DNA from: Vitrella brassicaformis CCMP3155 | Lineage: Eukaryota > Protista > Chromerida | Direction: 5' to 3' | DNA: 64,000 nucleotides | Assembly: GCA_001179505.1 (NCBI GenBank) | Contig: CDMY01000307.1 | Location: 62,001 to 126,000 of the forward strand | In this document: positions 19,865-53,844 of the stretch, piece by piece | Position numbering within the stretch: position 1 is the stretch's first letter | Layout: each line of letters opens with the position of its first letter | Position numbers and translations under genes: made by a program | Notes under the pieces: generated by a model | The model's input: only the letters and a program-made list of their open reading frames with translations | Told to the model about the DNA's origin: nothing | The model's database searches: none

Positions 19865-22310
19865 TCACTCGTCCTCAGCAATTGTGCTGCTGCCGCCGCC
19901 GTCCCCCTTTGCCCGCTTGTGCGGCCTCTCCGCCTCTCCATCGTCGCCACTTGATGCCGATGATGCGGCCGCCTTGCGCTTCTCGCCACGACTGATACCA
20001 GCACCACCAGCGGCTGCAGCAGGGGATTCACGCGATGACGACACGCCCACAGCCGCAGCGGGCACACCAGCAGACACCTGAACACATAACATGGCCTCTG
20101 TGTGTCGTTGATATGACATTGCTGCGTTACCTGTGTGGTGTGGCCGGCGATCTCTGCCAGCTCCTTGCTGAGGGCCGATTGAGCGTCGGTGAGGGTGTCC
20201 AGAATGGACGACAGGCTGCCGGCCAGCAAGGCACCATCCTGCAGGACACAGAGAGAAAAGTGAGTGCCGCTGCTCGCCTGTGTGTCTAGTGTTCTGTGCG
20301 CACCTCTGTATTGTCGGTATGTGTGGCTATGATGTTGTCTGCCCGCTCCAGGTCCGACGCTAGCTGAGGCACGAGCTGCAAGCCATACCAACACAGCGAA
20401 TGTCGCTCCTTGCTGCATGTCATCTGTAGACCCCTCTTCTCTCCCCTTACCGAACGCATCGAACGTATCTTCTGCAGAAGGTCACTAGAAGAGCCGCCGC
20501 CGCCACCCTGCCCATCTGCACCACACAATCAGGACACACAAGGCATGACAGATGAAAGCTGTCCATTAGTCGCATGTGTGTGGTGACCTGCAGGGGCAGC
20601 CGGGCCGTCCCCGCTGTCTATGTCCATCAAATCGCCGCCTGCAGTGGTGGACGAGGAGAGACAGGACTGTTCTAGTGCCCTTGTGTGGCGTGTTGGTGTG
20701 TACCATTGTGTTGCGAAGTGTAACCCACCGCCGCACCTGCAGCGGCAGACGATGAGGCGGCGGCAGCAGCAGCAGGACCTACAGACAACCACACACACTG
20801 ACCCGTTCATAGCTCATGCGTGTGCCGCCCCAGATTGTGCTTGCCTGCGGTCTGCCCGCCACCCTGACCACCACCAGCACCACCAGCAGCTGGGGGCAGG
20901 GCTACGTCTAGCTGGTTGCCGAACACCATCACGGGGTCGGCGGCTCTCATCACCTCCCGCACCACCGTCACTGTCTGGGGGAACCTGGCGGCTCCGACCC
21001 CCATCACCGGACGCTCCGTCGTGTAGAGGTGGACGGCGGCAAAGGTGCTGTAGCTGGTGATGCTGATGTGGGCCTCAAATTGGTGGCCTGGCTGGTCGCC
21101 GTGCAGCACTATCACGCGGTAGAAGTCTTCTAGTGCTGCCCGGTGGATGGTGCTGATAGTGCGGCAGTCCCATATGGGCGGCGGCTGACTGGCGAGATCC
21201 CGCTGAAGCGAAAAGGGACATATGACAATGAGTCAGTGGGACAGCTGGTGAGGTGCTTTGTGTGTGGCTGACCAGCTGGTTGTGGCGTGGGGCATCGTTG
21301 CGCCGGTGGACACCCTGGTACGCGACCTCAGACCCTCTATGCTGCATCCTGATCAGACACATCATGGCAGAGCGGTGCAGCCAATGTGGCGGTGTGTTTG
21401 TGTGTGTCACTCTGCTCATCTCTCTCACCGATACAACACAGCGTCGCGAACTGAAGCATACTCATACTCTGCAAACAGCAATACACCAAACACACACACA
21501 CACACACACAATCCGATGACCCTGCCGCCCTCACCGTCAATCGCACACACGGGGTCCGTTGCCCATTGCCCATAGCTCTCCCCTCCCGCCCCCCTCACCA
21601 TAATACTCACACACACACAGACGGGGTTGGCTGGGTCGTATCTCTCGCGGAAGGGGTGGTTGGCCGGCAGCGTCTGCAGGGTGTGGATGGTCAGCCGATG
21701 CACATCCAGCCGCTCCTCGCCGTCGAGGCGCTCGAGCTCCATGTTGAGATGGCGCTGGATGAGTGAGAGCTGCCGCAGCGCCTCACACCGCCCGTTGACC
21801 ACCGCCCGGCTGCCCACCCCCTCCACATCAGCACTGGTCAGCTCTATCGGCAACTGCCCGCCTCCCCGCCCCTGATGCACAGCCACCCTGATGATGCGCA
21901 CCGTCGCCGCCCAGTCGCCGCTTTTGTCGATGATGTACAGGAGCCGCTGCAGCAGATCGAGGGATGGCAGGTCATAGCTGATGACGTCCTTGAGGCCCTT
22001 GCCGGTGAGCTGCGTGTCGATTTGGGATTTGAGGAGGTCCGCGTCCACATGCTGTCTGCCGTGTTTGCACGTGCGGCGGAGGCGGGCGAGGCCGATGGAC
22101 AGATCTGCGCCGAGGAAGGGGAAGATCTCGTTGTCCACCTCTGGAGGCAGATCAAACAGGCGAACGCGCTGGTCCTCCTGCAAGCGAATAACGGAGCGAA
22201 AGAGACAGAGTGATTCACTGCATCGCTATGTGCTGTGCACACACGTGTACCTGTGGCTGAGGCAAAGGGGCAGCAGCCGATGACGCTGCTGACGGCGCTG
22301 CCTGGCCCAT
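19865..22310 (-). CDS. Lineage-specific F-box-like family protein, copy 2
   Basis: Exon 1 MGQAAPSAASSAAAPLPQPQ splices directly to EDQRVRLFDLPPEVDNEIFPFLG. Same core as copies 1 and 3. Long C-terminal exons end DGGGSSTIAEDE*. Confidence 0.8.
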
Positions 22311-22393
22311 CGTCACTCAGGCGCCCGAAGAGAAGCATGCAGACGCTCTATGGGATTCGCTGGCTCTCGTTCGAATGCTCACCAGCTGGCCTC

Positions 22394-22713
22394 TGTTGAG
22401 AAACCAATCAGGCTATAGCCAAGGTTATCCATCTGCGGGCCGACACATCATTTCCTCAACACCCCCCTTCGGACCGCAGAGCTAGGGTGCCCCCCTTTCC
22501 GCCTCTGCCTTTTCAAGGTTCCCAGTGTTGCCTCCAGGAATCCAACTCGCGACCCCTCCGCAGCGCTCAGCAGGATTGTTCTCCGCCCGGTTTGACCCCT
22601 TAAGGGTGTCAACCGGGGTTCGAACCGAGGTCAGTGGGCTCATAACCTGTTGAGAAACCAATCAGGCTATAGCCGAGGTTATCCATGCGGGCCGACATAT
22701 CGTTTCCTCAACA
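22394..22713 (-). mobile_element. TRIM: 320-bp non-autonomous LTR retroelement of the copia/Ty5 half-tRNA-primed type
   Basis: LTRs at 22394-22461 and 22648-22713 (TGTTGAG...CTCAACA). TSD GCCTC at 22389-22393 and 22714-22718. PBS GGTTATGAGCCCAC abuts the 5' LTR on the minus strand. PPT GAAGGGGGG abuts the 3' LTR. Confidence 0.93.
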
Positions 22714-22962
22714 GCCTCACTCTCAGCGCTCCATCTTTCTTTAGCTCGCGCATGCGCGCGATCCATCAATCTGAGGAGGCCTTGCGTTTGAGCAGGGTCA
22801 GTGCGGTGAAGGACACGCCTTACGGCTCAGACCGGCTATCTGAGTTCGAGGGAGGTATCATAATCCCTCAGGCCTTGGCCAGGTTTCCCATCGCGAAATC
22901 TCGACGATCCGCCAGCGCTGAGTTGGTCGCCCGACTCCCTCTCTCCATTCGGCACTGCGACG

Positions 22963-53141: not shown

Positions 53142-53844
53142 TAGTACGTAGGCCCCCACCCCGACCTTCATGTATACTGTGGTGAGACACACCTACCCCG
53201 ACACACCATTGCTTGTTGCTTGTTCTGTGTGAGTGAGTGAGTGAGTGAGAGATATCGATGGGTGGGTGGCTGGGTGATTGAATGGATGGATGGGCTGCAA
53301 GTGGTGAATCAGTTGCTGGCTCATTTTCGCTCTTTGTGCTGCTATGCGTTGAAAACGAACACATACATTGACTCATTCAATCATTCGTTGACCCATTCAT
53401 TCACTCATTCATTCACTTCCTGGCCATTCTCGAGTCTGTTTTGAATGAGAAGGAGTCTGTTTCCCGTGAGAATGTGTTCCACCCACCTGATCGCACAGAC
53501 AGACGAGGACACTTCGTGATGCCTCCCGTCGCTCTGGCCCAATCAGGTGCGCACTGCTGCACACCAACCGCATTCATGAGATTCGCAAACCCTACTCATA
53601 ATTAGGGTTCAGCTGAGCACCTCAGCCACCGCCCCGCCCCCCTGCAATGGGAAAAAGCCTCCCGGCAGCGATCGGCAATGAATGCGAGCTTAGATTGAAA
53701 GAGGGAGGAGAGAGAGCAGGAGAGAGGCTCACAAGAAGGCCACACACTCAGCCAGGAGTAGCCAGAACACAACAACCAAAGCCGCAGCATTGTGTCTGCT
53801 CGCGGTCTCGGGCAGGACGACTTGTGTTTCCGCGTGTTGTTTCG

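What the first reader, a model, noticed from the sequence alone, without database searches (positions are those of the whole stretch)
22389..22718. Complete 320-bp LTR mini-retrotransposon (TRIM) primed by half an initiator tRNA
Seen: two LTRs of 68 and 66 bp with TG...CA ends and terminal inverted repeats TGTTGAG/CTCAACA, differing by 3 substitutions and one 2-bp indel. Also a perfect 5-bp TSD (GCCTC), a PBS GGTTATGAGCCCAC touching the 5' LTR on the minus strand, a PPT GAAGGGGGG, and 186 bp of non-coding interior with short hairpins. Known: GGTTATG(A/G)GCCC is the PBS of Drosophila copia and yeast Ty5, which prime from the anticodon arm of a cleaved tRNA-iMet rather than its CCA end. Inferred: a young, very small non-autonomous element mobilised by a Ty5/copia-type partner in a chromerid, whose apicomplexan relatives are nearly transposon-free. 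It sits in the shared upstream region of two divergent genes.
Basis: partly seen in the sequence, partly recalled or inferred. Interest (0 to 1): 0.82.

Follow-up and report, generated by a model that had tools for sequence, protein, structure and literature searches.

The report
Miniature LTR retrotransposon in Vitrella
This is a real 320-base non-coding "mini" LTR retrotransposon, one of a small old family in the alga Vitrella brassicaformis. It appears to start its DNA copying from half of the initiator methionine tRNA, borrowing the enzymes of a copia-type element. It is a known kind of element, found here in a new branch of life.

Summary
Confirmed. Window 22394-22713 (minus strand) is a complete 320-bp TRIM-type LTR retrotransposon. 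It has 66/68-bp LTRs (TGTTG...CAACA), a perfect 5-bp TSD, a PBS and PPT abutting the LTRs, and a 186-bp non-coding interior.

It is one of six full-length copies (85-94% alike; five have their own perfect TSD). At least 20 solo LTRs also occur in the 72.7-Mb Vitrella brassicaformis assembly.

The 14-nt PBS is the exact complement of nt 27-40 of an initiator-type tRNA-Met. Its only assembled gene has a 9-nt intron at 37/38, so the match exists only in the spliced tRNA.

The same PBS, a similar PPT, LTR tips and leader flank the ~210-bp LTRs of a Ty1/copia family, the likely helper.

Not supported: "young". The LTRs are 4.5% diverged, the family is old, there is no empty site, and there are no RNA data. 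Priming and trans-mobilisation are inferred, not shown.

This is a known kind (TRIM/SMART; copia/Ty5 half-tRNA priming) in a new host lineage. Smaller TRIMs are already published.

First readers of this scan noted apparently the same family elsewhere in this genome (s1-199314, s1-221694, s1-221982, s1-233350).

The parts
22389..22393 (.). Target-site duplication, left copy (GCCTC)
   Evidence: Identical 5-mer at 22714-22718. Other copies have different perfect 5-bp TSDs.
22394..22461 (-). 3' LTR of the element (68 bp, TGTTG...CAACA in element sense)
   Evidence: Direct repeat of 22648-22713. Contigs from other genomic copies diverge exactly at 22394 and 22461/2.
22462..22470 (-). Polypurine tract GAAGGGGGG abutting the 3' LTR
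   Evidence: Read directly. Conserved in all six full copies. The related copia LTR is preceded by GAAGAGGGG.
22471..22633 (-). Non-coding interior (leader plus 3' untranslated remnant)
   Evidence: Too short to encode a protein. No Rfam match at E<=10. No covariation-supported structure. The leader is 83% alike over 48 nt to the leader of copia copy F2_B. The 3' part is 69% alike over 166 nt to a TRIM-like 3' end on contig C832.
22616..22626 (-). B-box-like motif GGTTCGAACCC in the leader (significance doubtful)
   Evidence: Only match to GGTTCGANNCC in the window, but 27 of 100 shuffles give at least one. Intact in four of six copies.
22634..22647 (-). Primer-binding site GGTTATGAGCCCAC abutting the 5' LTR
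   Evidence: 14/14 complementary to nt 27-40 of the spliced tRNA-Met(CAT) gene on G000:C378. The identical 14-mer follows seven copia LTRs.
22648..22713 (-). 5' LTR of the element (66 bp)
   Evidence: Direct repeat of 22394-22461 with 3 substitutions and one 2-bp indel. Contigs X1 and X3 run from 22657 into the right flank.
22714..22718 (.). Target-site duplication, right copy (GCCTC)

Best explanation
A non-autonomous miniature LTR retrotransposon (TRIM/SMART type) of Vitrella brassicaformis. It descends from a Ty1/copia element by loss of all coding sequence and of the middle of the LTR.

It keeps only what replication needs in cis:
- the LTR tips (TGTTG...CAACA) that an integrase recognises;
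- a PBS;
- about 30 nt of leader;
- a 3' untranslated remnant;
- a PPT.

Inferred mechanism:
1. Its RNA is packaged and copied by Gag-Pol of the related copia family.
2. Minus-strand DNA synthesis starts from a 5' fragment of the spliced initiator-type tRNA-Met. That fragment is cut in or near the anticodon arm so that its 3' end is about C40, as in Drosophila copia and yeast Ty5.
3. The copia-type integrase inserts the cDNA and makes a 5-bp duplication.
4. LTR-LTR recombination later produced the many solo LTRs.

Shown: the structure, the copy family, the TSDs, the PBS-tRNA complementarity, and the shared cis elements with a copia family. Inferred: the primer's identity and cleavage, the helper, the transcription start and end, and past (not present) activity.
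For: Structure and junctions.

Family:
- Six full copies, five with distinct perfect 5-bp TSDs.
- Twenty-two solo-LTR loci, 14 with perfect TSDs (12 distinct).
- Solos are 95.9% alike on average.

tRNA:
- No contiguous GGGCTCATAACCC exists anywhere in the assembly.
- ARAGORN calls a tRNA-Met(CAT) with a 9-nt intron at 37/38 on G000:C378.
- Its spliced anticodon arm is GTGGGCTCATAACCCAC.
- It has three G:C pairs in the anticodon stem and the T-loop ATCGAAA (A54/A60), both initiator hallmarks.

Helper:
- The same 14-nt PBS follows seven ~210-bp LTRs.
- On C832 these flank ORFs with Pol_BBD, gag_pre-integrs, rve, SH3_retrovirus and the start of RVT_2.
- The same LTR type lies 1.3-1.5 kb downstream of RVT_2 hits on C703, C736 and C902.
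- TRIM versus copia copy F2_B: pre-PPT, PPT and the first ~30 nt of LTR are 75% alike over 59 nt. LTR end, PBS and leader are 83% alike over 48 nt.

Literature: half-tRNA priming in copia and Ty5 (PMC5371799). Ty5 tips TGTTG/CAACA and a PBS complementary to the iMet half (bioRxiv 10.1101/2025.04.25.647736).
Against: - No RNA, cDNA or polymorphism evidence. All runs found were contigs, and none is on record as RNA.
- Only the window copy has the perfect PBS. Three copies share GGTCATGTGCCCAC, a 12/14 match.
- The middle of the copia LTR has no counterpart in the 68-bp LTR. The copia LTR appears to end CAACT, not CAACA.
- The one copia copy read in full (C832) lies in a gapped contig and has only the first ~45 positions of RVT_2.
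- The tRNA has C1:G72, not the A1:U72 usual for eukaryotic initiators.
- The family is old: LTR divergence is 1.5-11%.
Confidence: 0.85

Rival explanations
1. The mobile unit is the 68-bp repeat itself, a MITE-like DNA transposon with about 11-bp terminal inverted repeats and a 5-bp TSD. The 320-bp form would be a composite of two such units around captured DNA.
For: The 68-bp unit has imperfect inverted termini: 16-nt arms, 81% complementary. Single units outnumber 320-bp units about 4:1 and carry their own 5-bp TSDs.
Against: - The DNA between the repeats is the same at six loci.
- It starts with a 14/14 complement of the tRNA-iMet anticodon arm exactly at the repeat edge, and ends with a polypurine tract exactly at the other edge.
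- Both edges are homologous to LTR-flanking sequence of a copia family.
- The two repeats are always direct, and there are no inner TSDs.
- Solo LTRs are the normal recombination product of LTR elements (PMC3281118).
Confidence: 0.03
2. The element is the same, but the primer is the 5' exon half (nt 1-37) released by the tRNA-splicing endonuclease. It would not be a fragment cut from the mature spliced tRNA.
For: The gene has an intron at 37/38, so splicing necessarily produces a 5' half ending three nucleotides from the PBS edge. A primer ending at A37 would still pair with PBS nt 4-14 and yield the same cDNA.
Against: PBS nt 1-3 (GGT) also match nt 38-40 (ACC) of the 3' exon, in the TRIM and in all seven copia junctions. 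Pairing therefore extends across the splice junction. Splicing halves end in a 2',3'-cyclic phosphate, which cannot be extended without repair (general knowledge, not tested). GGT could also simply be inherited from intron-less ancestors.
Confidence: 0.08
3. The mini-element is transcribed by RNA polymerase III from tRNA-like internal promoter boxes. These would be an A-box-like TAGCCTGATTGG in the LTR and the B-box GGTTCGAACCC in the leader, about 43 nt apart by my own count from the sequence. The arrangement would be analogous to Cassandra TRIMs, which carry 5S promoters.
For: A perfect B-box consensus lies in the leader, and a second B-box-like motif, GAGTTCGATTCC, lies in the interior of three copies. 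The spacing is tRNA-like. A 68-bp LTR leaves little room for a Pol II promoter.
Against: - The B-box match is not significant: 27% of shuffles give one.
- The A-box-like motif has G where A14 is invariant.
- ARAGORN and Rfam see nothing tRNA-like in any copy.
- The motifs are mutated in several copies.
- There are no RNA data.
Confidence: 0.06
4. Assembly artefact or local tandem duplication rather than a mobile element.
For: The assembly is a short-read draft with many gaps (PMC4501334).
Against: Both junctions are present without differences in contigs of independent runs X1, X3 and X4. The interior-LTR junction is also present in an environmental metagenome, X11. Six loci share the architecture with different TSDs.
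Confidence: 0.01

Closest known systems
TRIMs (terminal-repeat retrotransposons in miniature) of plants, as surveyed in PMC4717578
   Same: Short LTRs with TG...CA tips, PBS and PPT, a short non-coding interior, a 5-bp TSD, solo LTRs, presence near genes, and dependence on an autonomous partner. Size is within the published range; the smallest, CcaRetroS9, is 233 bp with 52-bp LTRs.
   Different: The host is an alveolate alga, not a plant or animal. There is no sequence similarity. The PBS is complementary to the anticodon arm rather than to the 3' end of tRNA-iMet; the plant PBS type is from my own knowledge.
SMART / FRetro129 of grasses (PMC3281118)
   Same: About 300 bp in total (292 bp; 85-bp LTRs, 122-bp interior), TGT...ACA tips, 5-bp TSD, and solo LTRs. 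The candidate copia partner shares PBS, PPT and a short LTR motif but not the LTR body.
   Different: Here the LTRs are shorter (66-68 bp) and the interior longer (186 bp). Solo LTRs outnumber complete copies about 4:1, whereas in grasses complete copies outnumber solos 3.4-50:1. The PBS type differs, and the sequences are unrelated.
Yeast Ty5 and Drosophila copia (half-tRNA-primed Ty1/copia elements)
   Same: [quoted passage not shown] Tips are TGTTG...CAACA and the TSD is 5 bp. That GGTTATGAGCCC is the Ty5 PBS is from my own knowledge.
   Different: Those elements are autonomous; this one is a 320-bp non-coding derivative. Here the tRNA gene carries an intron inside the region that pairs with the PBS, so only the spliced tRNA can pair.
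Cassandra TRIMs (5S rRNA-derived Pol III promoter in the LTRs; bioRxiv 10.1101/2023.07.14.548913) and retrozymes (hammerhead ribozymes in the LTRs; own knowledge)
   Same: Miniature non-autonomous LTR elements.
   Different: No 5S, hammerhead or any other Rfam family matches the element at E<=10.

Membership tests
TRIM / SMART (miniature non-autonomous LTR retrotransposon) | Two short direct terminal repeats with TG...CA tips | tested here: met
   66- and 68-bp repeats, TGTTG...CAACA, 95% alike.
TRIM / SMART (miniature non-autonomous LTR retrotransposon) | PBS next to the 5' LTR and PPT next to the 3' LTR | tested here: met
   GGTTATGAGCCCAC at 22634-22647 (-) and GAAGGGGGG at 22462-22470 (-), both touching the LTRs. 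The PBS is 14/14 to the spliced tRNA-Met.
TRIM / SMART (miniature non-autonomous LTR retrotransposon) | Short interior without coding capacity; whole element well under 1 kb | tested here: met
   186-bp interior, 320 bp in all. No RNA family match.
TRIM / SMART (miniature non-autonomous LTR retrotransposon) | Evidence of transposition as a miniature: several copies at unrelated sites, each with its own TSD | tested here: met
   Six full copies, five with distinct perfect 5-bp TSDs. Solo LTRs with 12 distinct perfect TSDs.
TRIM / SMART (miniature non-autonomous LTR retrotransposon) | Mobilised in trans by an autonomous LTR element | not testable with these tools
   A candidate is found: a Ty1/copia family sharing PBS, PPT, LTR tips and leader. 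Mobilisation itself needs an experiment.
Half-tRNA-primed Ty1/copia lineage (copia, Ty5) | [quoted passage not shown] | tested here: met
   Exact complement of nt 27-40 of the spliced tRNA-Met(CAT) on G000:C378. That tRNA has 3 G:C in the anticodon stem and A54/A60, but C1:G72.
Half-tRNA-primed Ty1/copia lineage (copia, Ty5) | A cleaved 5' tRNA fragment actually serves as primer | not testable with these tools
   No small-RNA or cDNA data were available.
Half-tRNA-primed Ty1/copia lineage (copia, Ty5) | Ty1/copia-type Gag-Pol (integrase upstream of RT) in the autonomous relative | tested here: met
   C832 minus strand: Pol_BBD, gag_pre-integrs, rve and SH3_retrovirus, then the start of RVT_2. 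That copy is truncated in RT. Same-type LTRs lie downstream of RVT_2 on C703, C736 and C902.
Cassandra / retrozyme / tRNA-derived SINE | 5S rRNA, hammerhead ribozyme or tRNA-related sequence inside the element | tested here: not met
   No Rfam match at E<=10 in the window copy or in five other copies. ARAGORN finds none.
MITE (DNA transposon derivative) | Terminal inverted repeats and TSD, with no PBS or PPT and no direct-repeat architecture | tested here: not met
   Short imperfect inverted tips exist. However, the 320-bp form has direct repeats with PBS and PPT at their inner edges, homologous to copia LTR flanks.

The most novel reading that the evidence does not exclude
The 68-bp LTR is too small to hold a normal promoter, and the mini-element instead carries a tRNA-type internal Pol III promoter. 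This would consist of an A-box-like motif at the end of the LTR and a perfect B-box in the leader, at tRNA-like spacing. That would make it a tRNA-promoter counterpart of the 5S-carrying Cassandra elements. A milder variant is that the half-tRNA primer is handed over by the tRNA-splicing pathway, because the initiator tRNA gene has an intron three nucleotides from the primer's end.
Probability: 0.07. Interest if true: 0.75.

Novelty: new member of a known kind. Interest (0 to 1): 0.42.

Why it matters
- It shows that miniature LTR retrotransposons, and copia/Ty5-style half-tRNA priming, exist in chromerids, the free-living sister group of apicomplexan parasites.
- The published TE survey of this genome required LTRs of 100-1000 bp spaced 1-15 kb apart (PMC4501334). 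By those settings it would presumably miss this family; whether the family appears in that paper's TE tables was not checked.
- The PBS pairs across the splice junction of an intron-containing initiator tRNA gene. This is a clean natural marker that the primer comes from processed tRNA. It also explains why naive searches for a complementary tRNA gene fail.
- The abundance of solo LTRs shows that 68-bp repeats only 186 bp apart recombine readily.
- None of this overturns current understanding. It extends a known mechanism to a new lineage.

Tried and rejected
1. Plain search for the tRNA. GGGCTCATAACCC is absent from the assembly. The 12 hits to GGGCYCATAACC are the TRIM, copia PBSs and three non-tRNA sites, with no tRNA by ARAGORN. 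A gapped pattern that allowed an intron resolved this. Four other gapped hits lack the initiator T-loop and are at chance level.
2. tRNA-, 5S- or ribozyme-like interior: nothing in Rfam or ARAGORN.
3. Conserved RNA structure in the interior: RNAalifold finds 1 compensatory pair in 55 and a positive covariation term, so there is no support.
4. B-box: not significant.
5. Relatives in JGI metagenome contigs, by the LTR-PBS junction 19-mer: ten hits, all 19-27-nt chance matches.
6. Empty site: no paralogue in the assembly within 2 mismatches, and no joint 22393>22714 among the contig joints listed (four joints were not shown).
7. Expression: no run on record as RNA, and all runs were served as contigs.
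8. More copia copies could not be read. Consequently the 3' end of the copia LTR (CAACT?) and the existence of an intact helper remain unverified.
9. Ke et al. 1999 (Ty5 PBS) is not held in the library. The exact Ty5 and copia PBS strings are from my own knowledge.

Full report
OBSERVATION. The sequence at 22389-22718 is exactly as described.
- The repeat finder and a pairwise alignment show two direct repeats, 22394-22461 (68 bp) and 22648-22713 (66 bp).
- The repeats differ by three substitutions and one 2-bp indel.
- Both start TGTTGAG and end CTCAACA.
- GCCTC flanks them on both sides.
- Read on the minus strand, the right-hand repeat is followed at once by GGTTATGAGCCCAC, and the left-hand repeat is preceded at once by GAAGGGGGG.
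- The element therefore lies on the minus strand: 5' LTR 22713-22648, PBS 22647-22634, interior, PPT 22470-22462, 3' LTR 22461-22394.

A FAMILY, NOT A SINGLETON. The window belongs to an assembly of 72,700,666 bases in 1064 contigs. These are the exact figures of Vitrella brassicaformis CCMP3155 (PMC4501334), so the 'chromerid' attribution is right. A search of that assembly with the 320 bp gave 41 matches.
- Full-length copies. There are six, of 303-335 bp and 85-94% alike. Five have their own perfect 5-bp TSD: GAGGC, AGCCG, GCTCT, GGTTC and AGGGG in element sense. The sixth is degraded.
- Partial copies. There are two.
- Single 68-bp LTRs. These occur at 22 loci. Fourteen have perfect 5-bp TSDs by naive boundaries, which is twelve distinct sites because two loci are present twice with identical flanks. 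Two more loci fit after allowing for small rearrangements, and one matches 4/5. A chance 5/5 match is about 1 in 1000 per locus.
- Complete solo LTRs are on average 95.9% alike.
- Logan contigs of three independent runs bridge flank to LTR on both sides without a difference. Contigs from other copies peel off exactly at 22394, 22461/2 and 22647, which independently marks the LTR borders. An environmental metagenome contig covers interior to right LTR without a difference.

THE PRIMER-BINDING SITE AND ITS tRNA.
- A plain search failed. GGGCTCATAACCC does not occur anywhere in the assembly. None of the 12 sites with GGGCYCATAACC is a tRNA gene.
- A pattern that allowed an insertion after CTCATA and required the initiator-type T-loop found one gene on G000:C378, at about 53625-53706 on the minus strand (L050:1488-1569).
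- ARAGORN folds it as tRNA-Met(CAT) with a 9-nt intron at the canonical 37/38 position (sequence).
- After splicing the anticodon arm reads GTGGGCTCATAACCCAC. The PBS is the perfect complement of nt 27-40.
- Initiator hallmarks met: three consecutive G:C pairs in the anticodon stem, and A54/A60 in the T-loop (ATCGAAA).
- Hallmark not met: the tRNA has C1:G72 instead of the A1:U72 usual in eukaryotic initiators. I therefore call it initiator-type.
- The 14-nt match ends exactly at G26. In many eukaryotic tRNAs this base is modified and could stop reverse transcriptase. That is inference from general knowledge and was not tested.
- The pairing crosses the exon junction, so only spliced tRNA can be the primer.
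- Only the window copy has the perfect PBS. Three other TRIM copies share GGTCATGTGCCCAC (12/14), and no other element in the genome uses that variant. The variant looks like an inherited mutation of a sub-lineage, not a second primer.

THE LIKELY HELPER. The identical 14-nt PBS follows seven copies of a roughly 210-bp LTR on contigs C89, C416, C832 (twice), C861 (twice) and C1037.
- On C832 the DNA between two such LTRs encodes Pol_BBD, gag_pre-integrs, rve, SH3_retrovirus and the beginning of RVT_2, which is the Ty1/copia order. That copy is truncated in RT and the contig has gaps.
- LTRs of the same type lie 1.3-1.5 kb downstream of RVT_2 matches, on the same strand, on C703, C736 and C902.
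- The genome holds at least 63 RVT_2 matches, several in open frames of more than 1000 codons.
- Against one of the C832 LTR copies, the TRIM aligns over pre-PPT, PPT and the first ~30 nt of the LTR (75% of 59 nt). It also aligns over LTR end, PBS and ~30 nt of leader (83% of 48 nt).
- The last ~100 nt of the TRIM interior and its LTR also align (69% of 166 nt, E 1e-17) to a diverged TRIM-like 3' end on C832. C359 matches that C832 3' end at 83% identity over query positions 573-781, and matches the TRIM query itself at positions 30-94.
- The mini-element therefore looks like a copia derivative that kept both LTR tips, the PBS, part of the leader, the 3' untranslated end and the PPT, and lost the rest.

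AGE AND ACTIVITY.
- LTR-to-LTR divergence is 4.5% in the window copy (3 of 66 sites, a wide error) and 1.5-11% in the others.
- No copy pair is closer than 94%.
- I found no empty site in the assembly or in contigs of four runs, and no RNA run.
- 'Young' is therefore not supported. The data fit an old family with no sign of current activity, although the window copy still has intact cis signals.

MECHANISM, SHOWN AND INFERRED.
- Shown: the architecture, transposition as a miniature to many sites with 5-bp duplications, PBS complementarity to the spliced initiator-type tRNA, and cis elements shared with a Ty1/copia family.
- Inferred from the known biology of copia and Ty5 (PMC5371799; bioRxiv 10.1101/2025.04.25.647736): a 5' tRNA fragment with its 3' end near C40 primes minus-strand synthesis, the copia family's Gag-Pol acts in trans, and solo LTRs arose by LTR-LTR recombination.
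- Unknown: where transcription starts and stops inside a 68-bp LTR.
- The LTR contains a CCAAT motif and the palindrome GGCTATAGCC. The element's 3' LTR lies 56 bp upstream of, and in the same orientation as, a minus-strand ORF starting at 22338. An SDR-type gene starts at about 22963 on the plus strand. These are observations only.

COMPARISON WITH WHAT IS KNOWN.
- This is a TRIM/SMART-type element.
- FRetro129 of grasses is 292 bp with 85-bp LTRs (PMC3281118). The smallest plant TRIM is 233 bp with 52-bp LTRs (PMC4717578). The size is therefore small but not a record.
- Differences: the host lineage; half-tRNA priming in a miniature element; the intron in the primer's gene; and a solo-to-complete ratio near 4:1, where grasses show the reverse.
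- The published TE survey of this genome required LTRs of 100-1000 bp, 1-15 kb apart. By those settings it would presumably miss the family.
- A library search for TRIMs in alveolates found no such report. That is not proof of absence.

RIVALS.
- MITE reading of the 68-bp unit. It is contradicted by the PBS and PPT at the inner repeat edges and by their homology to copia LTR flanks.
- Pol III promoter reading. It rests on a B-box match that 27% of shuffles reproduce. ARAGORN and Rfam find nothing tRNA-like.
- Splicing-half primer. It cannot be excluded in silico.
- Assembly error. It is excluded.

LIMITS.
- Reads were available only as contigs.

EARLIER NOTES OF THIS SCAN. First readers flagged 322-, 335-, 303- and 320-bp TRIMs elsewhere in this genome. 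These are apparently the same family, judging by their sizes and titles; I did not see their coordinates. None of those notes had been followed up.

Noticed in passing
L050:1488-1569 (-) = G000:C378 about 53625-53706: This is the only initiator-type tRNA-Met gene found in the assembly. It carries a 9-nt intron (TGCAGGGAC) at position 37/38 and has C1:G72 instead of A1:U72. Introns in initiator tRNA genes are unusual.
   Followed up: partly
L043:4288-4772 (C832), L054-L064: A repeat of about 485 bp or more has at least 40 copies that are 96-98% alike. It ends in an (AACC)n tail with variable 3' flanks and two alternative conserved 5' continuations. It looks like the 3' end of a recently active non-LTR retrotransposon or SINE.
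   Followed up: partly
L043:5275-5501 and L048:952-1175 (C832): The ~210-bp copia LTRs appear to end CAACT rather than CAACA before the PBS. On C832 one LTR is preceded by a PPT and followed by a PBS, giving a tandem LTR-interior-LTR-interior layout. A first-reader note (s1-218471) reports LTRs ending AGTT...AACT elsewhere in this genome.
   Followed up: partly
L043:4040-4280 (C832) and G000:C359:101111-101329: A diverged TRIM-like 3' end, with the interior end, the PPT GAAGAGGGGG and a short LTR starting TGTCGAGGAAATGG. It is about 70-80% alike to the window element and hints at a second short-LTR subfamily.
   Followed up: partly
L016/L022 (C365, C585) and L020/L021 (C448, C133): Two solo-LTR loci each occur twice in the assembly with identical flanks and TSDs. 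They are either segmental duplications or uncollapsed duplicate contigs.
   Followed up: no
window 21306-21456 and 21759-21909: Summed contig depth here is 5-30 times that of neighbouring bins in all four runs, and many contig joints lie between 20485 and 21758. Other repeated sequences therefore lie just left of the element, inside or next to the putative minus-strand gene.
   Followed up: no
window 22404-22408 and 22658-22662; 22411-22420 and 22665-22674: Each LTR contains AACCAATCAG, a CCAAT-box-like motif that is antisense to the element. Each also contains the 10-nt palindrome GGCTATAGCC. The copia LTR has GCCCAATCAGC in sense orientation.
   Followed up: no
L010 (G000:C430:46272-46570): A solo LTR without a TSD is followed immediately by a second TGTTGAAGAAACG start, and there is an inverted LTR fragment 200 bp away. 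This is a nested or rearranged insertion site.
   Followed up: no
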